Position numbers and translations under genes: made by a program. 64,000 nt of DNA from Bugula neritina (lineage: Eukaryota; Animalia; Bryozoa), in assembly GCA_964035545.1 (NCBI GenBank), contig OZ037768.1, forward strand, positions 12,595,675 to 12,659,674, written 5' to 3'. A model generated the notes under the pieces. The model had not been told where the DNA came from, made no database searches, and was given only the letters and a program-made list of their open reading frames with translations. Shown piece after piece: positions 273-56,018 of the stretch; position 1 is the stretch's first letter, and each line of letters opens with the position of its first letter.

Positions 273-3200
273 TTGGTGACTCCAGAGTTTTTACTTTTCA
301 TTGAATTGTCAGAGTGTAAATCCTCCTGAGAATGAAGTGTGCTGTGGGCCCTCTTACAAGGTTTTCTCTTTTTCAGAGTAAAAACACTCTTGCATTTGAG
401 GCCTAAAATGAATAGAATAAACTACTAGTATGGGTGTGTGTTGGTGTTTGTGGGTGTGTGCATGTTCGTATGTGCTTGCGTGTAAGTCGCTGCGTGTTCG
501 TAAAGAACTGATATATATTTACATACATTGATGGCTAAATTATTGCTTGGAACTCACTAGGCCTCTAACAATAAAGTAAAATTAGCTATGGGTTTTACCA
601 TTATGCAAAACCATAAATTAGTAATATTCGATTCGAAAAATTCTTAACAATTTAATTCTGCAAATAATTGCCAGTATGAAACAAAGTAATTGGTGAGTTA
701 ATAATCAGATCCTTACCAGCAGAGGCGATGCTACGTAAAGCCCGCCTGATTTTTGCTGTTCGAGGTTTTGTCTCAACGCTCTGCATAACAGACACCTACA
801 TGGAAATTATTGCATTGCTATTGTACAATCACATTTAAATATGTTTTCATAGATTGACACTTCAATAGGCGTTTATAATATATAGAATAATGATATAATG
901 CACTCCAAATACACTAATTCAATATTCATAATGCTGTGACCAATTCATTAAGTGAAGAGTGCCTAACTAAAAAACCAGTTACAATAAAATGTCTTAAATA
1001 AACAGAATAATTGAAAATTTAACATTCTTTTGGCTGTTACACTGATTCACACAAAATTAACGACTTGTATATCTCAATGCTTAGCGAAACATGACCAATT
1101 TCTAGTAAGTTACTCCAAATATTTTAAAGCTCCATCTAATCTCAGTCAGCATCCGTAAATTTCATTGATGTTATATTTACTTGTTAGCTGACTCAATAAA
1201 TCAATAATTGACCAAAAACAGAACTGACATGCATTGGGAAAACGCTTATATCAAAACGAGTAAAATGATACGCGTTCAGCTCGTGACTTAGAAATAGACT
1301 GTGATCCAGATAAACACTAGACAGAGCCAGATTGATTACTAGCTTCCTCACATGTGCAATCAGCTTGTGAGACAAAGTTTAGAAATGGTTTGATCAACTC
1401 ATTGACTAATGGCCCAGAAGATGTTGTAGCAATCTTTTGCTGACACAAATTTAAATGTCAGACTAAGTCAATGTGAACACAAAATTAGCACACAATCAAA
1501 TATGTTTAGTCCAATATAAATTGCAATATTGAATACTACAATGTTATGATGCTAATCTCAAACAGTAGATGATTTTATAACAGATAATGTAAGGGCAATG
1601 TCTACTTCTGCTTCATGTTTTGACAAAGATTTTACAATATTTACCTGACCACTATGTCTCTCAGCTTTAGAAGTTGTAGGGAGACTAGCACCATACTTCA
1701 AGAGAATCTCTGCTGTGAGAGCATGGTTCTTTTGCCTGCACAGGTGCATTGGGGTTAATCCGTCCTAAAATATACCATAGCAGTAGCAACTCAATCAAAT
1801 ATTCAATATTCAATACTCAATATTCAAATAATATTTAATAAGAAAAGCTTTCAATTTTATGTTTTCCACTTCATGATAAGGGTCATAGTTCATGATAATA
1901 ATCAGTTGGTATAACAGTTGCAGTTGTAACATTAGTGGCACAGTTTGTGTTGTCACATTATTTTGGTAACTTGGAGTTGATTTTCTTAGATTTGTAGCTT
2001 CTCTTTTTACGAGCTGATTTAAAATAAAAGTTAATTTCCTCTTTGACAGATTCAGGACCTTGATTTAAATCATTTATAAATAAAAACTAATCAACTATTA
2101 ATCACTTATAAAATATATATCTGCTGAATAAAAATGTTGAGATAGTATGCTGCCGCACTGGCAGTTGATCACAAAAAGTAACTGTAACATCGCTAGCTGT
2201 TCGGAAAATATAAACTTACTTTGGCATAACAGTTGGGACTAGCACCATTTTCCAACAGCATCGATACAATATCACTGAGTCCATCCCTAGCCGAAAAATG
2301 TAGGGCGGTGTACCCATCTTCCGACTCTGCGCTTACTCTTGCGCCATACTCAATCAGAGCACAGACCGTATCCATGTCTCCTTTTTTCACAGCATAATGT
2401 AGAGGCGTGTAGCCATTCTGTAAACACAATTACTAGTAGCCATTTAGTAGACTTTATGAATCATCAGAGATTAGAATAAAGAATATAATTAACAAGATGT
2501 AAGCACTCTTACTAACATTATGATGAGGGTTTCTAGATTCAAGAAAATATAACAATTCTTTTTATAGGTTATGTAGTTCAACAGTAAGCAGAACATGAAC
2601 ATTGCCATTTACAATGTAGGTAATTTTTAATCATAAAAAGTAATGACGCTAATATACATCTATCAAATGGACTCAAAAATGTTCATAATTTTGCGGAGCT
2701 ATCTCAAGTTTAGCAGAATAACTCTCACCTTAGCCCTGCTGTCAGGGGAGACACAATATTTCTCCAGCAGAAGTAAAACTATTGCAGCTTGACCATGCTG
2801 AGCAGCTAGGTGCAGAGCTGTATGTCCATCATCATTTTTGAGTTCAGGCTTTGCGCCTTTTTTTAGTAACATTCTAGTTACTGCCTGTTGATTGTTTTCA
2901 ATGCTGACATGGAGAGGCGTCAATCCATTCTACAAGCACCAGCATGCACTGTGCCTAGATGTAACTCAAAATAATTTAGGAGTAAATTCTGCAACAATTG
3001 AAAGTAAATTTTGGTAGACTGGTCTTTACCAGTCTGAACCAACATACACAGCAAACGGTTGTTCTCAGGTGGAGGAACTGAATACACTAAATTGTTACCT
3101 TAGTCATGGAATCAAATAGTTTTGAATGCTTTGGAAGTGAAGTGATAACTCGTTCAATTCCTCGTTTTGCTGCTACATGCAGCAGGGAATAGTTATCTCT

Positions 3201-6200
3201 AGCCTCAGCATTCACATCAAATTCATGCTGCAACAGAAACAGTACAATATCTACACTACTCACTACTTTAACTCTTGTTGTTACATAATAAACAAACATT
3301 ATTTGTATAGCTATACAGGTTTCTCAAAGCAGTGATGAAACAGAAAAGTAAAACACCATTTCTAAAATAGTCAACCAGGAACTCCAAGTCCATTCAACTT
3401 GAAACTACATGTAAAAGTGAAAGTCATTGCAGTGTAGTGCTACAGTTACTCCCAACTCTTCAAGTTTAGAATGTGCTTACTGAAGATGGGTTTTCATTGT
3501 CTAGAGAAGAGGGTGTATGTAGTTGACTACTACTGATCTCACTGTAATCAATAGATAGTTCCTCACTGTCAACCTCTATTTCAGATTCACTAGCTCGGCA
3601 ACATACTAAAAGTGACAATACTGTCATGTATAAACTCAGATATATTCATTTTACAATCTGATTGAAGGAACTCTATGGGATTTGAATACCACTTCAAAAT
3701 ATCAAATACACCATTAGTCGATTATTTAACTTTATGCCTAGATCTTTATTAAATTTACTGTAACCTTTCGCCCAAAACAAAATAGTGGTCAAAAAATACT
3801 ACTGTACCTGTGGTTCATCTTCATCTAATGGGACTATATTTACAAGATTGATGGGGACTTTTACTGTGTGCTAACACTTGAATGACAATATTTAAACTTC
3901 TGCCAGATTGGCTATGATGATGGCAAGATGATATGGCCAAATTGCAAAGTAGTAATACAGGCAGCTTTAATTAGCCAAGCTGAAAAGGATATGACAAACA
4001 TTCATATGATGCAGTTACTCTTAGAGTGTACATTCATGTAACTCAAGAATATATTCATATTGGAACCAAACCAGCTAAACCCAGTCCCAAGTGACTAACA
4101 TATATATGTGACCTGGCACCACAAAACAAGGGATGTATATAAAATGTTGAAAACTTAGTTATTATTATGAATTGATAGAGCAGACTTTTTTGAACATTTT
4201 GCACTTTATTCGAAGTCTCTAGCATAAATAGAACTCGAGATATCAGTATTTAAAAACTTCAACGTTTTTAGAATTTCTAACTTACTGTTTCGAGAAAATC
4301 GCGTTTAAAGTTGGCAACTCTAGAATAAGTTGAGAATTGTTTGTTTACAATTTACAAGCCTTAGCAACGGGTCTTTGTATAATAGGAATAGTGACAAATT
4401 TGGTATCAAAATAATTGTGAAAGTTTGGGCTTTCTGTTAAACTAAATTTCATGCTGCCTCAACATAAAATTAGGTCAAATATGGCTGCCAAACTTTTTGT
4501 CTAATTTATTTGTCAATTTGCTTTTTACTTTGTTCAATGGTTGAAAGGTTTAACAATTCCAGCAAAGAAGAGAATGTTTTAGCAAGTTTGTGTGTTGAGA
4601 TATTTAAATTAGGCATCCAAGTCAGCAGGAAGTCATATAAAACAAAATGGCAGCTGCTTCCTCTTATACATTGAATATCTCCCTTTCCTCTAATATATTG
4701 TGTAATACATCAAACTGCAGCTATTGAGCTGTGCTGTTTCATAATTATTGCTTAATGAGTAGAACACTTACGAGAAAATTATTTTACTATTATGAGATCA
4801 TGCGAGATTTATTCATAAATATCTTTATAATCTCTAACGGCAAAGTTCTAAATTTAGCAATTGATTTGGCTGAGATGTTGAAAATATAAACATAAAATCA
4901 GCTAACAGAACTTTTGAGTTTTATTAGGCATTAATATTCACATTTAAAACATCAAATACATTATTTTAAAAAACCAATTAAATGCAGTAAAAAATCCAGC
5001 CTGGATACAACCATTATGCTTGAATTAACTCTTATCAAGAAAAGAAAATAAGGTCGCTTTTATGGTTTTTGCAAAAAAGGCACTTTTCATCTTTCTACTT
5101 CCTTGGTCTTCATAATATGAGTTTACGGAGTATGGACACATAACATCATGTATGTGGCAAAAGCTTCATCACTATCATCAGCTGATTTTCTAGCAATTAT
5201 AGATGCTGCTACTTGACATCCATCCTGCCAATCTACCCACTTATTGTCTATTCCAGAGCTGAAAGTACAATGTTGACTTTTTTTAGATAACAAAAGGAAA
5301 CCGTAGCTTGATTAGAAATTATACCCAGTTATATTATAAAAATTTAGTTGGCTAAACACTCTTGTGGTACTATTATGGCAGCAGTTAATTGTGATCCTGC
5401 ATTTTATCAACGTTTAAATTTATTGAATTAAACAGAACAATTTAAATTAAAAATTGTTGATAATTTTCAAGCACATTAAAAGACTGCAAACCTTTTTATG
5501 AATGAAATAAGCAGAAGCCATAACCTTGCATGCCAAAATTCAGTGTGTCTACATTAGAAGTATTAGATTGATAGGTAGTAGAGTTGTGTAGGTATAAGTC
5601 TTCACTCTAATGCCCTCGCAAGTCCACTTTCTAAAATGTACAGAATATCGGATTATTCTATATTAACATAGTATTATCAGTAAAATTACACATTATACAC
5701 TTGAATATCTAGCATATCTGCAATTGGCAATTTTGAAGCAATGTCTTTCGATAACTATTAACCACTCAGGCATTTAATTGAGTAAAAAAGCTAGCTAAGT
5801 TCAACTGAATCTATTAAAGACATTTACTATAAAATCAATTTGAATTCAATAAATTACTTTAAAATATGAATAAATTTTTGCTCATCTTATAATAAAATTA
5901 AAAAGTTTAGACTATTTATGCATTCAGTTAGTGTTACTAAAAGTAACTTACTGAAAAACTAAGTCAGTCAACTATAGAATCATCATGAACTCGCATTAAT
6001 ATTTCATCATTATACTCATTTACATTTAGTCACATTTATCATTTCAATTTGGTTATAGGTGATGCTTTTATCAATATGAATATAAATATGATTATCAATT
6101 GAGTTTTGACAGTAACTGTAAGCCTGCATAATGTGATAAAGATTTTATCATTATATTTTAAATCAAACTTTGAGCTAATTTAAAAATCACAAAAGAAACC

Positions 6201-9690: not shown

Positions 9691-9951
9691 AAACTCAAGC
9701 AAAAAATTTGGCCCTACATTCTCTTCCATTCGCCCATAAAAGCATTTCACAATAACGTGAATTTATAGCAATTGGAAAAGTTGAGAAAAAAAACAGTCAT
9801 CAACTGATTTAACAAAGAGTTATGGGAAGGAATTACCTCATCGTGTTTTCTACAAAATAGTTCACTGCACACAGTGCAGTAGGTCACTGCTGGTACTTTC
9901 TCTATCCCTTTCTTTGTGCAGATGGCACATGTCACACAGTTGTCCTCTACA

Positions 9952-10263
9952 AACAGCAGCAGGTCACAGGAGAAACTGTTATCAGGAGGTGGCACTATGG
10001 AATGAACTGCCAATCCCTTTACGGTCAATTAGCAACCCTAATGAATTTGGGAGGAAGTTGAGGCTTTATCTGTTAGAATAGTTGTATTTTTTTGTATTTT
10101 TCTGGATAGAGTCGCTGTCAGCTCGTGTTGGCCCGCGCATGACTAGCTAGGCTATAGCGCAATGGGCCTCATCATCGCCTCCTTGGCATTTTCTAATGTC
10201 CTTGTGTTATTAAATACCTTTGATGAAATAAACCAAACAAACAAACAAACAAACAAACAAACA
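9952..10263 (+). mobile_element. 5'-truncated CR1/L2-type LINE 3' end
   Basis: Absent from copies B and C. Encodes ...EVALWNELPIPLRSISNPNEFGRKLRLYLLE*, the typical WNxLP...FKxxL end of CR1/L2 ORF2, then a 3'UTR and an (AAAC)n tail. Short ACA duplication at the ends. Confidence 0.82.
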
Positions 10264-13563: not shown

Positions 13564-14330
13564 GCTTGAAGTACAAGAGTGTTTTCACACTGAAAAAGAA
13601 AAAGACCATTCCGGCTGTTTACAGCACAACTGATTGTCAGAAGAATGTCAACTTTGACAATTTATATAGAAACAAAAATCCTGGAATTACTAAGTATAAG
13701 TTTAGTATTTGACTTCTCAGGCCCTCCATTAGAATGGAGTAACACCAGTGCATCTAAGTATGGAAAAAGATCACATCTCTGTAGAAGAGATCCTGCTAAA
13801 GTATGGTGCTAATCTTTTCTCAACTTCCAGAGCCGGTTGTTCTTCAGCTGACAGACATAGTGGTCTGGTAAATAATTATTGTAAAATCTTTGTCAAAAAT
13901 TGAAGCAGAAGTTTGGTTAATATACCACTGCTATAGTACATTTCAGGATGGAATAACCCCAATGCACCTGTGCATGCAGAAAAACCATGCTCTCATAACA
14001 GAGATCCTGTTGAAGTATGGTGCTAGTCTATCCTCAACTGCCAGAACCGACTTTTCTTCAGCTGACAGACATAGTGGTCAACTTAATATAGTCAACTTTC
14101 TTTAAAAACATGAAGCAGAAGGAGATTTAGCCCTTACATTATCTGTTATAAAGTCATCATGGTACATTTTAGGATGGATTAACCCCAATGCACCTGTGCA
14201 TGCAGAAAAACCATGTTCTCATAGCAGAGATCCTGTTGAAGTATGGAGCTAGTCTTTCCTCAACTGCCAGAATGGGTTGTTCTTCAGCTGACAGACATAG
14301 TGGTCAACTTAATATGATCAACTGTTATCT
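13564..14330 (+). pseudogene. Inverted, rearranged ankyrin exons: linker exon 13564-13693 plus three tandem copies of the GxTPMHLC exon
   Basis: 130 nt exon GLKYKSVFTLKKKK...PGITK (diverged homologue of 402-273), then ~215-226 bp tandem units starting at 13733, 13947 and 14173 (NGVTPVHL, DGITPMHLC, DGLTPMHLC). Exon order is scrambled and there is an in-frame stop at 14103-14105. Confidence 0.75.
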
Positions 14331-14957
14331 AAGTATGGATATAGTACTATCACTTACTATATAAAGACCAGTTTCTCTTTAGTATTAATCCAAAACATTC
14401 CATCCAGCTGGCTGGCGATGGTCAAGCCGGTAGTTTGTATGAGACTGAGATTCGTAACACTCAGCTCTCTAATGACTATATTCTTCCAGAAAAGATTTGC
14501 TACCCCCAAACATCTCTCGTTACATGTAAATCTACTTTGTTGAACTTATATTCACATTCACATTGAGGTTGGAAAATGTTACTTGCATTTGTTGTTCTGT
14601 TTTCTTCAGTGAATGTTCCAAATTTCCAAATAACTAAAACTCGTTCTGGAATTACTTTTAATTTATTGAGTATTTATTTCATGCAAACTTTACCCTAACT
14701 GATGATTGAAGTCCAAAAGTCTCTGAATAATCCTAATATAACTCTTGCAGTATAACTATATTAACACTCAACATAACTTCATGACAATAATGCTTTCTGT
14801 AAAAATGTACACAAATAAAGATGATGTCATACAACAATGGTATTCTAGATCCAATTTAGTAATTGTTTAAATCCACTATCACTCTAGCTTCAATATAATA
14901 TAATAGGACTCAGTGGCAAACATTTTTGTTTTGTAAAAATTGATGCAAATTTGCTGC

Positions 14958-15076
<119 letters not shown>

Positions 15077-15336: not shown

Positions 15337-15394
15337 TTGAGATATATATATATATATATATATATATAAAGAAATTTAGATCTTTATTTATTGA

Positions 15395-22004: not shown

Positions 22005-25000
22005 TCAGAAGTCAGAAGTATTTTCCCTTTTCGCTTTTGAGACGAATGCAAAATATCGGCGCAGCCTCGCTGTAACAATTCTCGACATATTCTTTTCTAC
22101 TATACTGTCCAAAGTCTCAACGTCTAAAGAGCACATAACATATATCAGATTAGTTATGTATTAAAGTTTTCTTGCTATGCTTTGATACAAGTTTACAATC
22201 CTAATATTTTTATATAAAGAGGGACGATATATCAATAATGCTACTATTTGAAGTGTAAGCAGAAGCTAGTTTCACATTTCTGATCATATTGCATGTTACT
22301 ATCAGCTTCAAAAGATATCAGAGATGTTCCTAAAAAAGACTGCTCAATGAATATAGTGGCTATACCCATAGCCAGCTGCATTGATTGGAAAAAGGAAGTA
22401 TTTCGAGACAGTGAACAGTTTAGATTGTTTATACACTTCTGAAGGTATTAAAGTCTGGAGACATGCTAGACAGTTTGTATAAATTTGTATAAATACCAGC
22501 ATGTTACATGCTATAACAACCTGTTTCTATACCTGGTAACTTTACATTGCTTGTAAAAATAACAGCTTTTCAATATTGCTAAATCCTAAGGTGTTGACAG
22601 CTCAAAATTGGCAAAAGCTAAAGTTGATAACAAAGTTTACTATTTAATACTACATACCACAAAGGCTGTCATTCACTGTCTGCTTATGTTCCTGCCATGT
22701 TACACCATCATCACTTGCAATGACAATGGTTTCCTGTTCATCTTGACTAGCAGCAACATCTATTATGACAGGGCTGAAAAAAAAAACACAGGTGCCATTT
22801 TTAGAAAACAGTTATACTTTTTACATGTACTGTGTTTGAATAAAGATGTAATAAGGTTTAATGAAAACATGAAAAAGTAATAAAAATAACATAAAGATTT
22901 TCAGCTTCTCCCACTAAACTCAATGACAAGTGTGTGAATAGAAAATTACCCAATAAAGGTGGCACAAGCAGGTTCTAGAGAGAGAATGGGGGAGATGACA
23001 GATTCACTGTTATGAAGAGAGGGCATCACTCCTTTCTCAAGGAGACGGCACACAATTCTCATTGGTTCGGTTGCCACACCAGGTGGGATGGTAAAATGGA
23101 CTTTCTCTCGGCATCCCTGGAAGACTCCTCCTCTGGCATCCACCAGGAAACTGATACGGAATCTAAAGTGAGATGCATATACAATGTCAACGCAGTTGAT
23201 AATGAAGTAGCTGGTAGTTAATTTATGTGTGCATGTGTGCGTGTTTGTGTGTGGGCGTGTGTTGTTATTGCAGTAGCAGTTTTCTTATATATATAGAAAA
23301 GCTTCTACTGTAATTATTAAAATAAACCCAATAGAACTGAGTAATGTTTAGCAACAGTTTTAACTGCAACAATCCTTCCAAGTTAATTATCATTACCTTT
23401 TCAATTTGAGCTTCTCACTACAAATAAAGAAAAAAAAACTGATTTTATAGAACAAATTTACAAAATGTCTTTCATACACCGCTTTTGAACTACGTACAGC
23501 CAAAGAATGAGAAACATGCCCATTGCATTTCTTGTCTATGTGATATATAGAAAAAATAGATCAACTTGCTTCACATATAGATGGGTACATTATATACTAA
23601 ACATACTTAGTGACTCCAGAGTTTTTACTTTTCATTGAATTGTCAGAGTTTAAATCCTCCTGAGAATGAGGTGTGCTGTGGGCCCTCTTACAAGTTTTTC
23701 TCTTTTTCAGAGTAAAAACACTCTTGCATTTGAGGCCTAAAATGAATAGAATAAACTACTAGTATGGGTGCGTGTGGGTGTTTGTGGGTGTGTGCGTGTG
23801 AGTCGCTGCGTGTTCGTAAAGAACTGATATATATTTACATACACTGATGGCTAAATTATAGCTTGGAACTCACTAGGCCTCTAAGAATAAAGTAAAATTA
23901 GCTGTGGGTTTTACCATTATGCAAAACCATAAATTAGTAATCTTCGATTCGAAAAACTCTTAACAATTTAATTTTGCAAATAATTGCCAGTATGAAACAA
24001 AGTAATTGGTGAGTTAATAATCAGATCCTTACCAGCAGAGGCGATGCTACGTAAAGCCCGCCTGATCTTAGCTGATCGAGGTTTTGTCTCAACGCTCTGC
24101 ATACCATACACCTACAAGGAAATTATTGCATTGCTATTGTACAATCACACTAAATATACATTTTCATAGATAGACACTTCAATAGGCGTTTATAATATAT
24201 ATAATAATGATATAATGCACTCCAAATATACTAATTCAACATTCATAATGCTGTGACCAATTTATTAAGTGAAGAGTGCCTAACTAAAAAACCAGTAACT
24301 ATAAAAGGTCTTAAATAAACAGAATAATTGAAAATTTATCATTCTTTTGGCAGTTACACTGATTCACACAAAATTATCGACTTGTATATCTCAATGCTTA
24401 GCGAAACATGACCAATTTCTAGTAAACTTGTTACTCCAAATATTTTAAAGCTCCATCTAATCTCAGTCAGCATCTGTAAATTTCATTGATGTTATATTTA
24501 CTAGTTAGCTGACTCAATAAATCAATAATTGACCAAAAACAGAACTGACATGCATTGGGAAAACGCTTATATCAAAACGAGTAAAATGATGCACTTTTAG
24601 CTCATGAATTAGAAATAGACTGTGATCCAGATAAACGCTAGACAGAGCCAGATTGACTACTAATTTCCTCACATGTGCAATCAGCTTGTGAGACAAAGTT
24701 TAGAAATGGTTTGATCAACTCATTGATTAATGGCCCAGAAGATGCTGTAGCAATGTTTTGCTGACACAAAATTAAATGTCAGACTAAGTCAATGTGAACA
24801 CAAAATTAACACACAACCAAATATGATTAGTCCAATATAAGTTGCAATATTGAATACTACAATGTTATGATTCTAATATCAAACTGTAGATGACCTTATA
24901 ACAGATAATGTAAAGGCAATGTCTACTTCTGCTTCATGTTTTGACAGAGATTTTACAATATTTACCTGACCACTATGTCTCTCAGCTTTAGAAGTTGTAG

Positions 25001-27826
25001 GGAGACTAGCACCATACTTCAAAAGGATCTCTGCTGTGAGAGCATCGTTTTTCTCCCTGCACAGGTGCATTGGGGTTAATCCGTCCTAAAATATACCATA
25101 GCAGTAGCAACTCAATCAAATAGTCAATATTCAATACTCAAATAATATTTAAGAAGAAAAGCTTTCAATTTTATGTTTTCCACTTTTGATAAGGGTCATA
25201 GTTCATGATAATAATCAGTTGGTATAACAGTTGCAGTTGTAACATTAGTGGCACAGTTTGTGTTGTAACATTATTTTGGTAACTTGGAGTTGATTTTCTT
25301 AGATTTGTAGCTTCTCTACTTACGAGCTGATTTAAAATAAAAGTTATCATCTTCTTTGATAGATTCAGGACCTTGATTTAAATCAGTTATAAATAAAAAC
25401 TAAACAACTAGTAATCACTTATATAATAGATATCTGCTGAATAAAAATTTAATGGAAGTTTGAATAAAGAAACTTAGAACAGCAAATGTTGAGATAGTAT
25501 GCTGCCGCACTGGCAGTTGATCACAAAAAGTAACTGTAACATCGCTAGCTGTTCGGAAAAGGTAGACTTACTTTGGTATAACAGTTGGGACTAGCACCAT
25601 TTTCCAACAGCATCGATACAATATCAATGAGTCCATCCCTAACAGCAAGGTGTAGGGGGGTGAACCCATTTTCCGACTCTGCGCTTACTCTTGCGCCATA
25701 CTCAATCAGAGCACAGACCGTATCCATGTCACCTTTTCCCACAGCATAATGTAGAGGCGTGTAGCCATTCTGTAAACACAATCACTAGTAAGCGTTTAGT
25801 AGACTTTATGAATCATCAGAGATTAGAATAAAGAATATAATTAACAAGATGTAAGCACTCTTACTAACATTATGATGAGGGTTTCTAGATTCAAGAAAAT
25901 ATAACAATTCTTTTTATAGGTTATGTAGTTCAACAGTAAGCAGAACATTAACATGGCCATTTACAATGTAGGTGATTTTTAATCATAAAAAGTAATGAAG
26001 CTAACATACATTGATCAAACAGACTCCAAAATGTTCATAATTTTGCTGAGCTATCTCAAGTTTAGCAGAATAACTCTCACCTTAGCCCTGCTGTCAGGGG
26101 AGACACCATATTTCTCCAGCAGAAGTAAAACTATTGCAGCTTGACCATGCTGAGCAGCTAGGTGCAGAGCTGTATGTCCATCATCATTTTTGAGTTCAGG
26201 CTTTGCGCCTTTTTGGAGTAACATCCTTGTTACTGTCTGTTGATTGTTTTCAATGCTGACATGGAGAGGCGTCAATCCATTCTACAAGCACCAGTATGCA
26301 CTGTGTCTACATGTAACTCAAAATAATTTAGGAGTAAATTCTACAACAATTGAAAGTAAATTTTGGTAGACTGCTTTTTACCAGTTCTAATCAACATACA
26401 CAGCCAACGGTTGTTCTCAGGTGGAGGAACTGAATACACTAAATTGTTACCTTAGTCATGGAATCAAATAGTTTTGAATGCTTTGGAAGTGAAGTGATAA
26501 CTCGTTCAATTCCTTCTTTTGCTGCTGCATGCAGCAGGGAATAGTTATCTCTAGCCTCAGCATTCACATCAAATTCATGCTGCAACAGAAGCAGTACACT
26601 ATCTACACTACTCACTACTTCAACTCTTGTTGTTACATAATAAACAAACATTATTTGTATAGCTATACAGGTTTCTTGAAGTAGTGATGAAACAGAAAAG
26701 TAAATCACCATTTCCAAAATAGTCCACCAGGAACTTCAAGTCTGCTCAATTGAAAACTAAAACTAAATGTAAAAGTGAAAGTAATTGCAGTGTAGTTCTA
26801 CAGTTACTCCTAACTCTTTAAGTTGAGTGTATGCTTACTGAAGATGGGTCTTCATTGTCTAGAGAAGAGGGTGTATGTAGTTGACTACTACTGATCTCAC
26901 TCTGATCAATAGATAGTTCTTCACTGTCAACCTCTATTTCAGATTCACTAGCTCGGCAACATACTAAAAGTGACAATACTGTCATGTATAAACTCAGATA
27001 TATTCATTTTACAATCTGATTTAAAGAGGTCTATGGGATTTGAATACCACTTCAAAATATCAAACACACCATTAGCCGATCTTTTAACTTTATGCCTAGG
27101 TCCTAGTTACTAGATTTACTGTATCCCTTTGCCCAAAACAAAATAGTACGTAAAAAAAATTAGTAATACTGTTTCATCTTCCTCTAATGGGACTATATTC
27201 ACCAGATTGATGTCTATTTTACTGTGTGCAAACACTTTAATGAAAATATTTAAACTTCTGCCTGATTGTTTATAATGATGGCAAGATGATTTTCATGCAA
27301 AACTTACCCAAATTGGTAATTGAGGCCCGAAAGCTTCTGAATAATTCTAATATCATTTTTGCAGTATAAGCATATTAACACTCAACATAATATTAATACA
27401 ATAATGTTTTCAATAGAAATGTAGACTAATAATTATGATGTAAACAGTTTCTGTTGTGGGTAGTATTATGATTGTGATGTCATACAACAATGGTATCCCA
27501 ATTTAAATGTAGCAAATATTTCAATTTATTATTACATTAACTTTAATATCTTATTATTAGGACTTATAAGCAACAATTGCAAGGTTTTCATACTTCGCAA
27601 AGTGGTAGACAGTTTGTATTTAATTTGAATTTTAATAAAAAATTATTGAAATTCATATAAATTTGGTACTTGCAGGACAATTGGATGAATAAAGTGAATA
27701 AATTAAGTGAATAATTTTTTAAATAACTTTTTCACTGCAGGTTTTTAAAAACCTAATATAAGAATAAATTTGAGAAAGCAGTACTATGTTCAGCATGTTT
27801 TCCTATATACTTATCTGTTGGAGCAT
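22005..27826 (-). CDS. Ankyrin-repeat/ZU5 'mini-ankyrin' gene, copy B (12 exons, ~494 aa, 6 ANK + one ZU5)
   Basis: Exons 27826-27811, 27346-27308, 26963-26839, 26579-26451, 26281-26081, 25769-25572, 25085-24966, 24111-24033, 23736-23607, 23162-22950, 22773-22658, 22123-22005 sum to 1485 nt in one open frame ending TGA. ZU5 motifs SFLVDARGG, IPPG, RIVCRL, PVII, SDDGVTWQEH, RIVT..RYFAFVS match ankyrin ZU5-A. Confidence 0.85.
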
Positions 27827-29423: not shown

Positions 29424-30118
29424 TCAGTTGAGTTGGTAGAATAGGACTTTCTTCTTATCAGATCTGGGTACAATCAACATGTCTTTATACACATGGAGAT
29501 CAAATGATCTACTATCACTCTTAACAGTTGCCTCTTCTAGCATAGACATCTGTCTACTTACATTATAACAGGTTTACTATAGCCTAAATATATTATATAT
29601 CCAGAAATTGAAGGAAAACATACACGCGCCTACAAATTGTTTTAATATATTTTAGTCTAGTGCTAACCACACTGTATTCCATGGTTGGGGTGAAATTAGT
29701 ATTTTGTAATTGTAATTGGTTGTAATTATTCACATTTTTTATAAATAATTGAATGTAATTAATAATTGATGTGTAAAAATGTATATGTAATAACAATATC
29801 AGGAAACTCAAGCAAAAAATTTGGCCCTACATTCTCTTCCATTCGCCCATAAAAGCATTTCACAATAACGTGAATTTATAGCAATTGCGACCATCACGTG
29901 GAAAAGTTGAGAAAAAAACAGTCATCGACTGATTTAACAAAGAGTTATGGGAAGGAATTACCTCATCATGTTTTCTACAAAATAGTTCACTGCAAACAGT
30001 GCAGTAGGTCACTGCTGGTACTTTCTCTATCCCTTTCTTTGTGCAGATGGCACATGTCACACAGTTGTCCTCTACATCAGCAGAAGGCAGGCTTTCTATA
30101 CTAACGTCAAATACTTCC
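29424..30118 (-). pseudogene. Relic B-box (TRIM-like) gene, copy B: exons 30118-29962 and 29557-29424
   Basis: Intact 157 nt B-box exon with no ATG (ATA GAA AGC at the probable start position). The acceptor of the terminal exon is mutated AG to AA. Confidence 0.65.
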
Positions 30119-36894: not shown

Positions 36895-37895
<1,001 letters not shown>

Positions 37896-37896
37896 C

Positions 37897-39110
37897 CTTG
37901 TAGAAGAGATCCTGTTAAAGTATGGTGCTAGTCTTTGTTCAACTTCCAGAGCCGGTTTTTCTTCAGCTGACAGACATAGTGGTCAGGTAAATATTGTAAA
38001 ATGTTTGTCAAAAATTGAAGCAGAAGTTTGGTTAATATACCAATGCCATAGTACATTTTATGATGAATTGACCCCAATACACTTGTACATGCAGAAAAAC
38101 CATACTCTTATAGCAGAGATCCTGTTAAAGTATGGTGCTAGTCTCTCCTCAACTGCCGGAACCGACTTTTCTTCAGCTGACAGGCATAGTGGTCAACTTA
38201 ATATGATCAACTTTCTTTCAAAACATGAAGTAGAAGAAGATTTAGCCCTTACATTATCTGTTATAAAGTCATCATGGTACATGGTACATTTTAGGACAGC
38301 CATGTTAATGTTCTGCTTACTGTTGAACTACATAACCTATAAAAAGAATTGTTGTATTTTCTCGAATCTAGAAACCCTCATCACAATGTTAGTAAGAGTG
38401 CTTACATTTTGTTAATTATGTTCTTTATTCTAATCTCTGATGATTCATAAAGTCTACTAAACGGTTACTAGTGATTGTGTTTACAGAATGGCTACACGCC
38501 TCTACATTATGCTGTGGGAAAAGGTGACATGGATATCGTCTGTGCTTTGATAGAGTATGGCGCAAGAGTAAGCGCAGAGTCGGAAGATGGGTTCACCCCC
38601 CACACCTTGCTGTTAGGGATGGACTCATTGATATTGTATCGATGCTGTTGGAAAATGGTGCTAGTCCCAACTGTTATACCAAAGTAAGTCTATTTTTTCC
38701 AAACAGCTAGCGATGTTACAGTTACTTTTTGTGATCAACTGCCAGTGCGGCAGCATAATGTTGCAATGTTGCAACTGCAACTGTTATACCAACTGATTAT
38801 TTTCGTGAACTATGATCCTTATCATAAAGTGGAAAACATAAAATTGAAAGCTTTGCTTATTAAATATTATTTGAGTATTGAATATTGAATATTTGATCGA
38901 GTTGCTACTGCTATGGCATATTTTAGGACGGATTAACCCCAATGCACATGTGCAGGCAAAAAAACCATGCTCTCATAGCAGAGATCCTGTTGAAGTATGG
39001 TGCTAGTCTCTCCTCAACTGCTAGAACCGGTTGCTCTTCAGCTGACAGACATAGTTGTCAACATTATATGATCAATTTTCTTCCAAAATATTAAGCAGAA
39101 GGAAATTTAA
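37897..39110 (+). pseudogene. Inverted ankyrin exon cluster in unit B, including a frameshifted NGYTPLH exon
   Basis: Two tandem ANK units, then an inverted copy of ~25960-24960. Exon 38487-38683 lacks one base (accccccacacc vs acccccctacacc). DGLTPMH exon from 38927. Confidence 0.78.
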
Positions 39111-41783: not shown

Positions 41784-44700
41784 TCAGAAGTCAGAAGTAT
41801 TTTCCCTTTTCGCTTTTGAGACAAATGCAAAATATCGGCGCAGCCTCGCTGTAACAATTCTTGTCATATTCTTTTCTGCTATTCTGTGCAAAGTCTCAAC
41901 GTCTAAAGAGCACATAACATATATCAGATTAGTTATGTATTAAAGTTTTCTTGCTATGCTTTGATACAAGTTTACAATCCTAATATTTTTATATAAAGAG
42001 GGACAATATATTAATAGTGCTACTATTTGAAGTGTAAGCAGAAGCTAGTTTCATATTTCTAATCATATTGCATGTTACTATTAGCTTCAAAAGATATCAG
42101 AGATGTTCTTAAAAAAGACTGCTCAATGAATATAGTGGCTATACCCATAGCCAGCTGCATTGAGTGGAAGAAGGAAGTATTTCAAGGCAGTGAACAGTTG
42201 AGATTGTTTATACACTTCTGAAGGTATTAAAGTCTGGAGACATGCTAGACAGTTTGTATAAATTTGTATAAATACCAGCATGTGACATGCTATAACAACC
42301 TGTTTCTATACCTGGTAACTTTACATTGCTTGTAAAAATAACAGCTTTTCAATACTGATGAATCTTAGGGTGTTGACAGCTCAAAATTGGCAAAAGATAA
42401 AGTTGATAACAAAGTTTACTATTTAATACTACATACCACAAAGGCTGTCATTCATTGTCTGCTTATGTTCCTGCCATGTTACACCATCATCACTTGCAAT
42501 GACAATGGTTTCCTGTTCATCTTGACTAGCAGCAACATCTATTATGACAGGGCTGTAAAGGAAAAACACAGGTGCCAGTTTTAGAAAACAGTTATACTTT
42601 TTACATGTACTGTGTTTGAATAAAGATGTAATAACGTTTAATGAAAACATGAAAAAGTAAGAAAAGTAATATAAAGATTTTCAGTTTCTCCCACTAAACT
42701 CAATGACAAGTGTGTGAATAAAAAATTACCCAATAAAGGTGGCACAAGCAGGTTCTAGAGAGAGAATGGGGAAGATGAGTAATTCATAGTTTGTAAGAGA
42801 GGGCATCAGTCCTTTCTCAAGGAGACGGCACACAATCCTCATTGGTGCGGTTGCCACACCAGGTGGGATGGTAAAATGGACTTTCTCTCGGCATCCCTGG
42901 AAGACTCCTCCTCTGGCATCCACCAGGAAACTGATACGGAATCTAAAGTGAGATGCATATACCATGTGAACGCAGTTAATAATGAAGTAGCTGGTAGTTA
43001 ATTTATGTGTGCATGTGTCCGTGTTTGTGTGTGTGTGGGGGGGGGGGGGGTGTGTTGTTATTGCAGTAGCAGTTTTCTTATATATATAGAAAAGCTTCTA
43101 CTGTAATTATTAAAACAAACCCAATAGAACTGAGTAATGTTTGGCAACAGTTTTAACTGCAACAATTCTTCCAAGTTAGTTATCATTACCTTTTCAATTT
43201 GAGCTTCTCACTACAAATAAAGAGAAAACAACTGATTGTATATAACAAATTTACAAAATGTCTTTCATAAACCGCTTTTGAACTACATACAGCCAAAGAA
43301 TGAGAAACATGCTCATTGCATTTCTTGTCAATGTGATATTTAGAAAAAATAGATCAACTTGCTTCACATATAGTTGGTACATTATATACTAAACGTACTT
43401 AGTGACTCCAGGGTTTTTACTTTTCATTGAATTGTCAGAGTGTAAATCCTCCTGAGAATAAAGTGTGCTGTGGGCCTTCTTACAAGTTTTTCTCTTTTTC
43501 AGAGTAAAAACACTCTTGCATTTGAGGCCTAAAATGAATAGAATAAACTACTAGTATGGGTGTGTGTTGGTGTTTGTGGGTGTGTGCATGTTCGTATGTG
43601 CTTGCGTGTAAGTCGCTGCGTGTTCGTAAAGAACTGATATATATTTACATACATTGATGGCTAAATTATTGCTTGGAACTCACTAGGCCTCTAACAATAA
43701 AGTAAAATTAGCTATGGGTTTTACCATTATGCAAAACCATAAATTAGTAATATTCGATTCAATTTAATTCTGCAAATAATTGCCAGTATGAAACAAAGTA
43801 ATTGGTGAGTTAATAATCAGATCCTTACCAGCAGAGGCGATGCTACGTAAAGCCCGCCTGATTTTTCCTGTTCGAGGTTTTGTCTCAACGCTCTGCATAA
43901 CAGACACCTACATGGAAATTATTGCATTGCTATTGTACAATCACATTAAAATATGTTTTCATAGATTGACACTTCAATAGGCGTTTATAATATATATAAT
44001 AATGATATAATGCACTCCAAATACACTAATTCAATATTCATAATGCTGTGACCAATTCATCAAGTGAAGAGTGCCTAACTAAAAAACCAGTTACAATAAA
44101 ATGTCTTAAATAAACAGAATAATTGAAAATTTAACATTCTTTTGGCTGTTACACTGATTCACACAAAATTAACGACTTGTATATCTCAATGCTTAGCGAA
44201 ACATGACCAATTTCTAGTAAGTTACTCCAAATATTTTAAAGCTCTATCTAATCTCAGTCAGCATTCGTAAATTTCATTAATGTTATATTTACTAGTTAGC
44301 TGACTCAATAAATCAATAATTGACCAAAAACAGACCTGACATGCATTGGGAAAATGCTTATATCAAAACGAGTAAAATGATGCACTTTTAGCTCATGACT
44401 TAGAAATAGACTGTGATTCAGATAAACACTAGACAGAGCCAGATTGACTACTAATTTCCTCACATGTGCAATCAGCTTGTGAGACAAAGTTTAGAAATGG
44501 TTTGATCAACTCATTGATTAATGGCCCAGAAGATGCTGTAGCAATGTTTTGCTGACACAAAATTAAATGTCAGACTAAGTCAATGTGAACACAAAATTAA
44601 CACACTATCAAATATGTTTAGTCCAATATAAGTTGCAATATTGAATACTACAATGTTATGATTCTAATATCAAACTGTAGATGATGTTATAACAGATAAT

Positions 44701-47700
44701 GTAAAGGCAATGTCTACTTCTGCTTCATGTTTTGACAGAAATTTTACAATATTTACCTGGCTACTATGTCTCTCAGCTTTAGAGGTTGTAGGGAGACTAG
44801 CACCATACTTCAAGAGAATCTCTGCTGTGAGAGCATGGTTTCTCTGCCTGCACAGGTGCATTGGGGTTAATCCGTCCTAAAGTATACCATAGCAGTAGCA
44901 ACTCAATCAAATATTCAATATTCAATACTCAAATAATATTTAAGAAGAAAAGCTTTCAATTTTATGTTTTCCACTTTTGATAAGGGGCATAGTTCATGAC
45001 AATAATCAGTTGGTATAACAGTTGCAGTTGTAACATTAATGGCACAGTTTGTGTTGTCACATTATTTTGGTAACTTGGAGTTGATTTTCTTAGATTTGTA
45101 GCCTCTCTACTTACGAGCTGATTTAAAATAAAAGTTATCATCTTCTTTGACAGATTCAGGACCTTGATTTAAATCATTTATAAATAAAAACTAATCAACT
45201 ATTAATCACTTATAAAATAGATATCTGTTGAATAAAAAAGTAATAGAAGTTTGAATAAAGAAACTTAGAACAGCAAATGTTGAGATAGTATGCTGCCGCA
45301 CTGGCAGTTGATCACAAGAAGTAACTGCAACATCACTAGCTGTTCGGAAAAGGTAGACATACTTTGGTATAGCAGTTGGGACTAGCACCATTTTCCAACA
45401 GCATCGATACAATATCACTGAGTCCATCCATAGCGGCAATGTGTAGGGGGGTGAACCCATCTTCCGACTCTGTGCTTACTCCTGCGCCATACTCAATCAG
45501 AGCACAGACCGTATCCATGTCACCTTTTCCCACAGCATAATGTAGAGGCGTGTAGCCATTCTGTAAACACAATTACTAGTAACCGTTCAGTAGACTTTAT
45601 GAATCATTAGAGATTAGAATAAAGAATATAATTAACAAGATGTTAGCACTCTTACTAACATTATGATGAGGGTTTCTAGATTCAAGAAAATATAACAATT
45701 CTTTTTATAGGTTATGTAGTTCAACAGTAAGCAGAACATTAACATGGCCATTTACAATGTAGGTAATTTTTAATCATAAAAAGTAATGAAGCTAACATAC
45801 ATTGATCAAACAGACTCCAAAATGTTCATAATTTTGCTGAGCTATCTCAAGTTTAGCAGAATAACTCTCACCTTAGCCCTGCTGTCAGGGGAGACACCAT
45901 ATTTCTCCAGCAGAAGTAAAACTATTGCAGCTTGACCATGCTGAGCAGCTAGGTGCAGAGCTGTATGTCCATCATCATTTTTGAGTTCAGGCTTTGCGCC
46001 TTTTTGGAGTAACATCCTTGTTACTGTCTGTTGATTGTTTTCAATGCTGACATGGAGAGGCGTCAATCCATTCTACAAGCACCAGCATGCACTGTGCCTA
46101 CATGTAACTCAAAATAATTTAGGAGTAAATTCTGCAACAATTGAAAGTAAATTTGGGTAGACTGGTTTTTACCAGTCCGAACCAACATACACAGCCAACG
46201 GTTGTTCTCAGGTGGAGGAACTGAATACACTAAATTATTACCTTAGTCATGGAATCAAATAGTTTTGAATGCTTTGGAAGTGAAGTGATAACTCGTTCAA
46301 TTCCTTGTTTTGCTGCTACATGCAGCAGGGAATAGTTATCTCTAACCTCAGCATTCACATCAAACTCATGCTGCAACAGAAGCAGTACTCTATCTACACT
46401 ACTCACCACTTTAACTCTTGTTGTTACATAATAAACAAACACTATTTGTATAGCTATACAGGTTTCTTGAAGTAGTGATGAAACAGAAAAGTAAAGCACC
46501 ATTTCTAAAATAGTCCACCAGGAACTCATAGCCCACTTAACTTAAAGCTAAATGTAAAAGTTAAAGTCATTGCAGTGTAGTTCTACAGTTACTCCTAACT
46601 CTTCAAGTTGAGTGTGTGCTTACTGAAGATGGGTCTTCATTGTCCAGAGAAGAGGGTGTATGTAGTTGACTACTACTGATCTCACTCTGATCAATAGATA
46701 GTTCCTCACTGTCAACCTCTATTTCAGATTCACTAGCTCGGCAACACACTAAAAGTGACAATACTGTCATGTATAAACTCAGATATATTCATTTTACAAT
46801 CTGATTCAAGGAACACTATGTGACTTGAATACCACTTCAAAATATCAAACACACCATTAGCCGATCTTCTAATTTCATGCCTAGATCTTTACTAAATTTA
46901 CTGTACCCTTTCGCCCAAAACAAAATAGTAGGTCACAAACTAATACTGTAATAGTGGTTCATCTTCATCTAATGGGACTATATTCACCAGATTGATGTGT
47001 ATTTTACTGTGTGCAAACACTTTAATGAAAATATTTAAACTTATGCCAGATTGGCTATAATGATGGCAAGATGATATGGCAACATTGCCATATAGTAATG
47101 CAGGCAGCTTTAACTAGCCAAGCTGAAAAGGATATGACAAACATTCATATGATGCAGTCACTATAAGAGTGTACATACATGTAACTCATCAATATATTTA
47201 TATTGGAACAAAATTAGCTAAACCCAAGTGACTAACATATATATTGTAGTTAGACAAGTTTGTAAATTATTTAGATTTTCATGTAAAACTTACCCAAATT
47301 GGTGATTGAGGCCCGAAAGCTTCTGAATAATTCTAATATCATTTTCGCAGTATAAGCATATTCACATTCAACATAATATTAAGACAATAATGCTTTCAAT
47401 AGAAATGTAGACTAATAATTATGATGTAAGCAGTTTTTGTTGTGGGTAGTATTATGATTGTGATGTCATACAACAATGGTATCCCAATTTAAATTTAGCA
47501 AATATTTCAATTTACTATTACATCAACTTCAATATTTTATTATTAGGACTTGTATGCAACAATTTCGGGTTCTCAATATTTTACAAAGTGGTAGACAGTT
47601 TGTATTTAATTTGAATCTTAATAAAAAATTATTGAAATTCATATAAATTTGGTACCTGCAGGACAATTGGATTCAAGTGAATAAATTTTTGAATAACTTT

Positions 47701-47794
47701 TTCACTGCAGGTTTTTAAAAACCTAATATTAGAACAATTGAGAAAGCAGTACTATGTTCAGCATGTTTCCCTATTTACTTATCTGTTGGAGCAT
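41784..47794 (-). CDS. Ankyrin-repeat/ZU5 'mini-ankyrin' gene, copy C (12 exons, ~494 aa)
   Basis: Exons 47794-47779, 47332-47294, 46748-46624, 46370-46242, 46072-45872, 45560-45363, 44876-44757, 43907-43829, 43528-43399, 42942-42730, 42552-42437, 41902-41784. Same lengths and phases as copy B, open frame, same stop (...KRENTSDF*). Confidence 0.85.

Positions 47795-55566: not shown

Positions 55567-56018
<452 letters not shown>

What the first reader, a model, noticed from the sequence alone, without database searches (positions are those of the whole stretch)
273..47794. Tandem family of truncated 'mini-ankyrins' (6 ANK repeats + a single ZU5) with frames intact in every copy
Seen: splicing the short ORFs together gives a 12-exon, 1485 nt frame with matching phases in copies B and C, and in all 9 exons of A inside the window. 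It ends right after ZU5-A. Known: canonical ankyrins have 24 ANK repeats, ZU5-ZU5-UPA and a death domain, and the ZU5-A DAR motif is needed for spectrin binding. The GLTPMHLC repeat and SFLVDARGG mark this gene as derived from the C-terminal repeats and ZU5-A of true ankyrin. Inference: this is a lineage-specific expanded family of small adaptors that could link variable ligands to spectrin, or compete with full-length ankyrin. Neighbouring B-box exons and inverted ANK exons have decayed while these have not, which argues for function.
Basis: partly seen in the sequence, partly recalled or inferred. Interest (0 to 1): 0.8.

Follow-up and report, generated by a model that had tools for sequence, protein, structure and literature searches.

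The report
Tandem family of truncated ankyrin genes
A marine invertebrate genome (a bryozoan, according to earlier notes of this scan) carries about 20 tandem copies of a shortened ankyrin gene, made by copying part of the normal ankyrin gene and kept intact by selection; the product probably couples some ligand to the spectrin skeleton, but no expression data were available.

Summary
The window carries three ~20 kb tandem units (93-95% identical). Each has a minus-strand gene of 10 coding exons: a new acidic N-terminus, six ANK repeats plus two partial ones, a basic linker and one complete ZU5. Its 16-nt first exon is not conserved. An in-frame ATG at 46770, present in all 19 copies aligned, gives 1491 nt.

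Genome-wide there are 20 copies in a 670 kb cluster, 18 of them intact. Compared with their own introns, the exons show 226 nonsynonymous changes against 359 expected, at most 2 stop-type changes against 17 expected, and 7 indels against about 79 expected. dN/dS is about 0.5, so the copies are under selection, not merely young.

The exons are colinear with repeats R15(end)-R22, the pre-ZU5 linker and ZU5-N of the canonical ankyrin gene on another contig. Intron positions are shared and some intron sequence still aligns. Homology ends inside the canonical exon that runs on into ZU5-C, which explains the early stop.

Spectrin binding is inferred only: both key Phe residues are kept in every copy and DAR in 16 of 19. 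No transcript evidence was reachable. First-stage readers noted the same family in two neighbouring windows. The contig is not human. I did not search or fold the joined product.

The parts
46624..46770 (-). Copy C exon 2 (first coding exon in my model): ATG, hydrophobic start with Cys-Cys, acidic Ser-rich stretch. No homology to canonical ankyrin.
   Evidence: ATG and donor GT conserved in 19/19 copies. Lowest pN/pS of the gene together with E4 (0.34).
46242..46370 (-). Copy C exon 3: end of repeat R15 plus R16
   Evidence: 46.5% identical to C2:12375045-12374917 of the canonical ankyrin gene. AG/GT in 19/19 copies.
45872..46072 (-). Copy C exon 4: ANK R17-R18
   Evidence: Pfam Ank E 1e-16. 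50% identical to canonical exon C2:12374737-12374540.
45363..45560 (-). Copy C exon 5: ANK R19-R20
   Evidence: Pfam Ank E 5e-19. 61% identical to canonical exon C2:12374288-12374097.
44718..44876 (-). Copy C exon 6: ANK R21 plus the second half of R22 (the TPLH part of R22 is deleted). An alternative strong donor lies after 44757.
   Evidence: 48% identical to canonical exon C2:12373190-12373011, with a 7-residue gap. Donor options; frame open in all copies.
43829..43907 (-). Copy C exon 8 (my label): basic linker with no detectable counterpart in the canonical gene
   Evidence: AG/GTAAGG borders conserved. No BLAST match in the canonical gene.
43399..43528 (-). Copy C exon 9: linker exon homologous to the canonical exon just before ZU5
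   Evidence: 37% identical to C2:12353321-12353208.
42730..42942 (-). Copy C exon 10: first part of ZU5-N with the FxxxF and DAR motifs
   Evidence: Pfam ZU5 E 5.6e-7. Aligns to ankyrin-2 ZU5-N in PDB 6m3q_E residues 15-92. 50% identical to canonical C2:12352464-12352243.
42437..42552 (-). Copy C exon 11: middle of ZU5-N
   Evidence: Frame continues FIG|PVIIDV.... Weak match to ankyrin-1 residues 93-120 of 3f59.
41784..41902 (-). Copy C exon 12: last strands of ZU5-N, then the TGA stop 10 codons later
   Evidence: 46% identical to canonical C2:12350807-12350703. Nucleotide homology stops at window 41798. Every copy stops here.
22005..26985 (-). Copy B, complete gene. Exons: 26985-26839, 26579-26451, 26281-26081, 25769-25572, 25085-24927, 24111-24033, 23736-23607, 23162-22950, 22773-22658, 22123-22005.
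   Evidence: Coordinates mapped through the family alignment. All borders AG/GT, no stops, no length change.
273..3627 (-). Copy A, the part inside the window. Exons: 3627-3481, 3227-3099, 2929-2729, 2417-2220, 1764-1606, 795-717, 402-273. Exons 10-12 lie 216-1374 nt before the window start.
   Evidence: The whole gene, read from locus L002, is intact.
47779..47794 (-).
   Evidence: Present in C, but frameshifted, stopped or without its donor in 8 of 19 copies. It lies in a poorly conserved stretch.
38299..39023 (+). Inverted partial copy of the exon 5-exon 6 region; frame broken
   Evidence: Inverted self-matches at 91-97%. The exon-5-like ORF 38475-38687 loses the frame after about 42 residues.
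13748..14364 (+). Inverted, tandemly repeated exon-6-like fragments
   Evidence: ORFs; weak Pfam Ank hits; internal repeat at 79%.
53079..53357 (-). B-box-like exon co-amplified with the unit (also at 29863-30132 and 9750-10028). Not shown to belong to the gene.
   Evidence: Below-threshold match to ANCHR-like B-box. Member of a genome-wide family of at least 147 matches. Its donor phase (0) does not fit the acceptor at 46748 (phase 1); this comes from reading the sequence directly.

Best explanation
These are real protein-coding genes. They arose from a DNA-level partial duplication of the animal's canonical ankyrin gene and were then amplified into an array of about 20 copies, in both orientations, on another chromosome-scale contig.

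The duplicate kept the exons for ANK repeats R15(end)-R22, the exon before ZU5 and the three exons of ZU5-N. It lost R1-R14, R23-R24 and whatever lies between R24 and the pre-ZU5 exon. It gained a new N-terminal exon. It was cut at its 3' end inside the exon that in the parent gene runs from ZU5-N into ZU5-C, so a stop in the flanking DNA ends the protein about 10 residues after ZU5-N.

The product has about 496 residues: an acidic N-terminus, six and a half ANK repeats, a basic linker and one ZU5. It has been kept by moderate purifying selection.

Inferred, not shown: ZU5-N still binds beta-spectrin, the short ANK solenoid binds a ligand, and the protein therefore acts as a small adaptor or as a competitor of full-length ankyrin at spectrin.
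For: Structure:
- The exon chain has conserved AG/GT borders and phases in 19 aligned copies.
- Pfam finds Ank and ZU5, and the ZU5 exon matches PDB ankyrin ZU5-N.

Copy number:
- There are 20 copies on C4 between 12.41 and 13.08 Mb.
- 18 are intact. This includes L019, which has a fused exon 6/8 that keeps the frame.

Selection:
- dN/dS is 0.47 within and between subgroups, and 0.34-0.41 against the most divergent copy.
- Unique synonymous events match the intron-derived expectation (139 against 131). Nonsynonymous events are depleted (226 against 359, P = 2e-7).
- Stop-type events are at most 2 against 17 expected.
- Indels run at 53 per kb in introns but only 7 occur in 1476 nt of exon, 4 of them in frame.

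Origin:
- The exons are colinear with the canonical gene at 37-61% identity.
- The intron/exon borders around the ZU5 exon match those of the canonical gene, and intron patches are 65-77% identical.
- Homology ends at window 41798, where the canonical exon continues into ZU5-C.
- The C2 gene is the canonical one: UPA and Death follow its ZU5.

Spectrin determinants:
- FR[IML]SFLVDARGG keeps both Phe in 19 of 19 copies and DAR in 16 of 19.
- DAR975AAA abolishes beta-spectrin binding of ankyrin-B (PMC3044993).
- F913 and F916 of ankyrin-R are crucial for spectrin binding (PMC9864249).

Independent DNA: an ENA metagenome contig, 85% identical, has exons 10-12 intact.
Against: - No transcript or protein evidence was reachable.
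- The start codon and any 5' untranslated or coding exons are not settled. The exon 6 donor is ambiguous.
- dN/dS of about 0.5 is weak constraint compared with canonical ankyrins.
- Three aligned copies have changed the DAR motif (DAS twice, NAR once), and the metagenome relative has DSR, so spectrin binding may not be the selected function.
- ZU5-N is only about 50% identical to canonical ZU5-N and scores 30-39 bits on Pfam ZU5, against 77 bits for the parent.
- Gene conversion among copies is likely: mosaic cassettes occur in the ZU5 loop. This blurs the rate estimates.
Confidence: 0.6

Rival explanations
1. The family is functional but no longer a spectrin adaptor. ZU5-N and the short ANK solenoid have been turned to another partner, for example as a diversifying recognition or adaptor family like other tandemly expanded families of this genome.
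For: - The DAR motif is altered in 3 of 19 copies and in the metagenome relative.
- A hypervariable, cassette-like ZU5 loop and multi-allelic ANK positions 13/14 exist.
- ZU5 is strongly diverged from the parent.
- The genome holds other very large tandem families, such as the B-box exon with at least 147 matches.
Against: Both key Phe residues are conserved in every copy and DAR in most. Enrichment of variable sites at canonical ANK binding positions is not significant (P = 0.14). No alternative partner can be named.
Confidence: 0.22
2. The 'mini' architecture is incomplete. The exons are part of a longer transcript with further coding exons upstream, for example the B-box-like exon on the same strand 3-6 kb upstream, or an unrecognised first exon.
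For: - The B-box-like exon lies on the same strand upstream of each of the three copies.
- An acceptor at 46748 exists inside exon 2.
- A conserved non-coding block lies at 47300-47480.
- No RNA data are available.
Against: - An in-frame ATG is conserved in 19 of 19 copies.
- The B-box exon's donor phase (0) does not fit the 46748 acceptor (phase 1).
- Only about 13 B-box exons sit in the cluster, against 20 gene copies.
- The distance from B-box exon to gene varies from 2.9 to 6.3 kb between units.
- The 3' end is fixed by a stop in every copy.
Confidence: 0.1
3. The array consists of young, non-functional partial duplicates whose frames are intact only because they are recent or are homogenised by gene conversion.
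For: Units are only 5-7% diverged, and introns are as conserved as exons on a sliding plot. Two copies are clearly broken. Decayed relatives exist next to the parent gene.
Against: Nonsynonymous, stop and indel events are strongly depleted relative to the copies' own introns, while synonymous events match the neutral expectation. dN/dS stays at 0.34-0.47 even between subgroups with dS 0.16-0.19. Conversion alone cannot produce an exon/intron asymmetry.
Confidence: 0.05
4. Assembly artefact: uncollapsed haplotypes or mis-joined repeats inflate one or two genes into an apparent array.
For: This could not be tested. No reads were available.
Against: There are twenty copies in both orientations, with copy-specific indels, two subgroups 14% apart in introns, a fused-exon variant and pseudogenes. 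Haplotigs would give pairs, not such a series.
Confidence: 0.03

Closest known systems
Canonical ankyrins (human ANK1/2/3, C. elegans UNC-44, Drosophila Ank/Ank2) and the canonical ankyrin gene of this genome at C2:12.346-12.381 Mb
   Same: Direct homology. ANK repeats R16-R21, the pre-ZU5 linker exon and ZU5-N are colinear with the parent gene, with matching intron/exon borders around the ZU5 exon. The spectrin-binding determinants of ZU5-N (two Phe, DAR) are kept.
   Different: Six and a half repeats instead of 24. No ZU5-C, UPA, death domain or regulatory tail. A new acidic N-terminus with Cys-Cys. Twenty tandem copies instead of one to three genes. About 50% identity in ZU5-N and dN/dS of about 0.5.
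Short ankyrin products made by alternative promoters or splicing (from my own knowledge: small ankyrin-1 of muscle, AnkG isoforms with few or no ANK repeats)
   Same: Truncated ankyrin-derived proteins that keep only some modules and are thought to act as specialised adaptors.
   Different: Those are isoforms of the full-length gene and keep C-terminal modules. Here separate genes keep late ANK repeats plus ZU5-N only. This comparison rests on recall and was not tested here.
Other ZU5 proteins (UNC5, PIDD1, ZO-1)
   Same: They carry a ZU5 beta-sandwich used as a docking module.
   Different: In those proteins ZU5 is not ankyrin-type ZU5-N and, except in ZO-1, is followed by UPA and a death domain. 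The other ZU5 loci of this genome (C4:11.04 Mb, which has a Death match 5 kb away, and C7:14.82-14.84 Mb) show no BLAST similarity to this family.

Membership tests
Canonical ankyrin | Membrane-binding domain of 24 ANK repeats | tested here: not met
   Only R16-R21 are complete, plus the end of R15 and half of R22, by colinearity with the parent gene and by Pfam.
Canonical ankyrin | ZU5N-ZU5C-UPA supramodule | tested here: not met
   ZU5-N only. All 19 aligned copies stop within about 10 codons of its last strand. tblastx of the parent's 3' part against the window finds nothing beyond ZU5-N. UPA (PF17809) matches only C2:12.3487-12.3493 Mb.
Canonical ankyrin | C-terminal death domain | tested here: not met
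   PF00531 has 13 matches in the genome, none in C4:12.41-13.08 Mb.
Canonical ankyrin | Common descent with ankyrin genes (orthology or paralogy) | tested here: met
   Colinear exons at 37-61% identity, shared intron positions, intron patches 65-77% identical. The best hits outside the family are canonical ankyrins, in the genome and in the 1.84-billion-protein library.
Canonical ankyrin | Beta-spectrin binding through ZU5-N (FxxxF and DAR determinants) | tested here: inconclusive
   The motifs are conserved: Phe-Phe in 19/19 copies, DAR in 16/19. Their role is known from PMC3044993 and PMC9864249. Binding itself cannot be tested with these tools.
ZU5 domain (Pfam PF00791) | Score above the gathering threshold (21 bits) and a complete fold | tested here: met
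   30-39 bits for the first ZU5 exon alone in all copies. Exons 11 and 12 supply the remaining strands, by alignment to the parent and to PDB ankyrins. The joined domain was not scored.

The most novel reading that the evidence does not exclude
The array encodes a repertoire of minimal ankyrins anchored to membranes through a palmitoylated N-terminal Cys-Cys. Their ANK groove (positions 13/14) and a cassette-like ZU5 loop diversify by gene conversion. This would give the animal a variable set of adaptors that tie different membrane or foreign ligands (symbiont or pathogen proteins, for instance) to the spectrin skeleton, or that tune how much spectrin is available to full-length ankyrin.
Probability: 0.1. 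Interest if true: 0.75.

Novelty: new variant of a known kind. Interest (0 to 1): 0.5.

Why it matters
It is a clean natural example of a new gene family born by partial duplication. The 3' breakpoint can be placed within a few codons, and it explains the domain boundary.

The product is close to the smallest module set one would design to keep both ankyrin activities: a ligand groove of six repeats and the spectrin-binding ZU5. If the proteins are expressed and bind spectrin, they are a natural 'minimal ankyrin'. That would test which parts of ankyrin are needed for membrane-skeleton coupling, and whether truncated paralogues regulate the full-length protein.

The selective signal shows that a 20-copy array is being maintained, which raises the question of what advantage copy number or diversity gives.

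Tried and rejected
- An exhaustive search of all GT-AG exon chains timed out. I replaced it with local enumeration around the uncertain junctions, which shows many formally possible 5' chains, so the N-terminal model is a best choice and not a proof.
- The ZU5 loci at C4:11.04 Mb and C7:14.82-14.84 Mb were fetched as possible members but show no BLAST similarity to the family. I dropped them.
- Numbering the repeats through PDB matches was ambiguous because of the repeat nature of the query. I numbered them through the parent gene's exon order and my recollection of the human R21-R24 sequences.
- The sliding conservation plot does not separate exons from introns, so I used codon-based tests.
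- A test for excess variability at the six DARPin-randomised ANK positions gave an odds ratio of 1.8, P = 0.14. Diversifying selection is not claimed.
- The word search with the ZU5 exon found only one metagenome fragment, and the exhaustive search found no full-length relative. No public protein model or transcript could therefore be used to fix the splice model.
- A literature search for ankyrin in this bryozoan's genome found nothing relevant.
- I first scored L019 as broken at exon 8. Reading it directly showed an in-frame fusion of exons 6 and 8.
- The joined spliced product was not sent to any search, family scan or structure prediction; all such calls were made exon by exon, by reference. 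In some searches exons 8-12 were concatenated inside a script only to check the frame.


Full report
**What the window is.** The window is AT-rich (about 32% GC) eukaryotic DNA with short exons and GT-AG introns. It lies at C4:12595675-12659674 of a 216 Mb assembly. Earlier notes of this scan call the animal the bryozoan Bugula neritina; I did not test that. It is not a human contig. The last 5 kb are GC-rich and carry a gag-like ORF of a retrotransposon, which I only noted.

**The observation.** Self-BLAST shows three ~20 kb tandem units at 93-95% identity over exons, introns and intergenic DNA alike. On the minus strand each unit carries short ORFs with Pfam Ank matches (E down to 5e-19) and one with a ZU5 match. 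That ORF aligns to ZU5-N of human ankyrin-2 (PDB 6m3q).

Reading the borders directly and enumerating alternatives where needed, I get ten coding exons for copy C: 46770-46624, 46370-46242, 46072-45872, 45560-45363, 44876-44718, 43907-43829, 43528-43399, 42942-42730, 42552-42437 and 41902-41784. This gives 1491 nt from a conserved ATG to a TGA.

My model is therefore theirs apart from the start, though I count 11 exons, not 12. Copy A's last in-window exon ends at 273, as stated.

The ATG at 46770 is present in all 19. A stronger donor after 44757 could shorten exon 6 by 13 codons; both donors and the frame are conserved.

**The family.** A six-frame search of the assembly with Pfam ZU5, with exon 5 and with exon 10 finds 20 copies. 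All lie on C4 between 12.41 and 13.08 Mb:
- six on the plus strand at 12.41-12.57 Mb;
- seven on the minus strand at 12.595-12.76 Mb, including A, B and C;
- one divergent plus-strand copy at 12.85 Mb;
- six on the minus strand at 12.957-13.077 Mb.

I fetched and aligned 19 of them. Splice sites, exon lengths and frames are conserved almost without exception, the split codons at the four phase-1/2 junctions are all sense codons, and every copy stops within about 10 codons of the last ZU5-N strand. The exceptions are:
- One copy has a 29-nt deletion in exon 3.
- The twentieth copy (C4:12.983 Mb) has a frameshift in exon 10, and I found no exons 2-4.
- The 12.957-13.077 Mb subgroup has an in-frame 7-codon insertion in exon 11, a GC-AG intron (ATG|GCAAGT) and a 1-nt change that only rewrites the last few residues.
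- Three of that subgroup have in-frame deletions of 8-9 codons in exon 6.
- The 12.85 Mb copy has exons 6 and 8 fused in one 184-nt exon that keeps the phase.

So 18 of 20 copies look intact.

**Youth or selection?** The units are young, so intact frames alone prove little, and a sliding conservation plot does not separate exons from introns. Codon-based counts do:
- Nei-Gojobori dN/dS is 0.47 within each subgroup and between them (dS 0.07 and 0.18; intron K 0.05 and 0.14). Against the most divergent copy it is 0.34-0.41.
- I counted each distinct variant once and predicted neutral expectations from the mutation spectrum of the copies' own introns. Synonymous events match (139 observed, 131 expected). 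Nonsynonymous events are depleted (226 against 359, binomial P = 2e-7). Stop-type events are nearly absent (at most 2 against 17.3, P = 5e-6).
- Indel events occur at 53 per kb in introns, but only 7 occur in 1476 nt of exon, four of them multiples of three.

Gene conversion, which the mosaic cassettes in the ZU5 loop suggest, cannot create such an exon/intron contrast. The copies have therefore evolved as coding genes under moderate constraint.

**Origin.** The best match to exon 5 outside the family is on C2 at 12.374 Mb (60% identity). This is 22 kb upstream of the strongest ZU5 of the genome, which is followed by UPA and Death matches. That gene is the canonical ankyrin. The exons of the small gene match consecutive exons of it, in order:

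| Small-gene exon | Canonical counterpart | Identity |
|---|---|---|
| Exon 3 | second half of the R15-R16 exon | 46% |
| Exon 4 | R17-R18 | 50% |
| Exon 5 | R19-R20 | 61% |
| Exon 6 | R21-R22, with the TPLH part of R22 deleted | 48% |
| Exon 9 | the exon just before ZU5 | 37% |
| Exon 10 | first ZU5-N exon | 50% |
| Exon 12 | last ZU5-N exon | 46% |

The repeat numbers follow from the parent's exon order and from my recollection of the human R21-R24 sequences. The intron/exon borders around the ZU5 exon coincide with those of the parent, and intron sequence is still alignable (77% over 114 nt before the ZU5 exon; 66% over 317 nt across the last intron and exon). The copy was therefore made at the DNA level, not through an mRNA. 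The frame upstream of exon 3 still reads SVDRVLLLLQ, the relic of helix 2 of R15.

Homology stops at window 41798, four codons before the stop. In the parent the same exon reads on into ZU5-C. The early stop is thus the footprint of the 3' breakpoint.

Exon 2 (the new N-terminus) and exon 8 have no counterpart in the parent. R23-R24 are absent, as is the roughly 19 kb that separates them from the pre-ZU5 exon in the parent.

Decayed fragments of the family-type ZU5 exon, identical in FRISFLVDAR, repeat every ~5 kb just upstream of the parent gene (C2:12.394-12.415 Mb). Scrambled ANK relics lie at C2:12.540 Mb. This suggests, without proving, that the first partial copies arose next to the parent and that one moved to C4 and was amplified there.

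**Relatives elsewhere.** The word search with the ZU5 exon found a single 79-residue protein from an ENA metagenome contig. The exhaustive search of 1.84 billion representatives found the same protein, and after it only canonical ankyrins and fragments at about 50% identity or less. The metagenome contig is 85% identical in nucleotides over 2.5 kb, roughly equidistant from the main-group copies. It has exons 10-12 and their splice sites intact, so the family exists in at least one other sampled genome. I found no published description. Two first-stage notes of this scan on neighbouring windows describe the same family.

**Likely function.** Shown: a conserved ORF for about 496 residues with a hydrophobic Cys-Cys start, an acidic serine-rich stretch, six and a half ANK repeats, a basic linker and a complete ZU5-N.

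Inferred: binding to beta-spectrin. The first ZU5 exon reads FR[IML]SFLVDARGG. Both Phe are kept in 19 of 19 copies and DAR in 16 of 19. In mammals DAR975AAA abolishes spectrin binding of ankyrin-B (PMC3044993), and the two Phe at the start of ZU5A are crucial in ankyrin-R (PMC9864249). From my own knowledge, ZU5-N alone suffices for binding.

Against this inference, three aligned copies and the metagenome relative have changed DAR, and the domain is far from the parent (30-39 against 77 bits on Pfam ZU5).

Variation among copies peaks at ANK positions 13/14 and in one ZU5 loop, but the excess at canonical binding positions is not significant (P = 0.14). 'Variable ligands' therefore remains a possibility only. 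A palmitoylated Cys-Cys membrane anchor is a guess from the sequence.

- The inverted ANK exons are indeed partial and frame-broken copies of the exon 5-6 region.
- The B-box-like exon is not visibly decayed. Its ORF is open in all three units, it matches an ANCHR-like B-box only below threshold, and it belongs to a separate family with at least 147 matches in large arrays on other contigs. Its donor phase does not fit the acceptor inside exon 2, so I do not join it to the gene, but RNA data are needed.

**Limits.**
- No transcript data could be reached.
- I left out every search, family scan or fold of the joined product. A junction-sequence search for cDNA or retrocopies was left out for the same reason.
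- Assembly correctness could not be checked with reads, although twenty distinguishable copies in two orientations are not what uncollapsed haplotypes give.

**Verdict.** The evolutionary reading is well supported and is now mechanistically explained. The functional reading is plausible but untested. This is a new variant of a known kind, of moderate interest.

Noticed in passing
window 58838-64000: GC-rich (50-59%) block with a 262-residue gag-like ORF carrying a CCHC zinc knuckle, and long ORFs on both strands. It looks like an LTR retrotransposon inserted beside the array. Earlier notes of the scan describe Gypsy elements just beyond the window.
   Followed up: no
window 53079-53357, 29863-30132, 9750-10028 (minus); genome C6:9.1-11.6 Mb, C3:30.8-31.3 Mb, C8:5.4-5.8 and 10.1-10.4 Mb: The B-box-like exon inside each unit belongs to a very large family (at least 147 six-frame matches) arranged in long tandem arrays on other contigs. 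Only about 13 copies sit in the mini-ankyrin cluster.
   Followed up: partly
C2:12393872-12415351 (loci L027-L029): Decayed fragments of the family-type first ZU5 exon (FRISFLVDAR identical, several with stops) repeat about every 5 kb immediately upstream of the canonical ankyrin gene, and one has a matching last ZU5 exon with a stop. This may be the birthplace of the family.
   Followed up: partly
C2:12540380-12541319 (locus L030): Scrambled, gapped relics of ankyrin-type ANK exons (similar to exons 3, 4 and 5), 160 kb from the canonical gene.
   Followed up: no
L019 (C4:12844800-12854700), fused exon at about 5386-5569 of the oriented locus: The most divergent family member has exons 6 and 8 in one 184-nt exon with the phase kept and a very different R21. 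This is either an in-frame deletion of the intron region or the older gene structure.
   Followed up: partly
L007-L011 (C4:12.957-13.077 Mb): This subgroup replaces the GT donor after exon 11 with GCAAGT (a GC-AG intron), has a 7-codon insertion there and a different C-terminal tail. Only the GC donor keeps the last ZU5 strands in frame.
   Followed up: partly
window 47300-47480: A non-coding block more conserved among copies (0.92-0.94) than its flanks, 550-700 nt upstream of the conserved ATG. It is a candidate promoter or 5' untranslated exon.
   Followed up: no
window 42780-42810 (exon 10, residues about 48-58) and homologous positions in all copies: A hypervariable ZU5 loop occurs in a few discrete versions (HNSESVIS, QYDELLIF, PNGETLVF, TNYELLIF) that are shared across subgroups. 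The pattern is expected from gene conversion between copies.
   Followed up: no
window 55500-56015: A perfect (CA)n microsatellite of about 450 nt.
   Followed up: no
C4:11037946-11043473: A ZU5 match and a Death-domain match 5 kb apart on the same strand, unrelated by BLAST to the family. Probably an UNC5- or PIDD-like gene.
   Followed up: no
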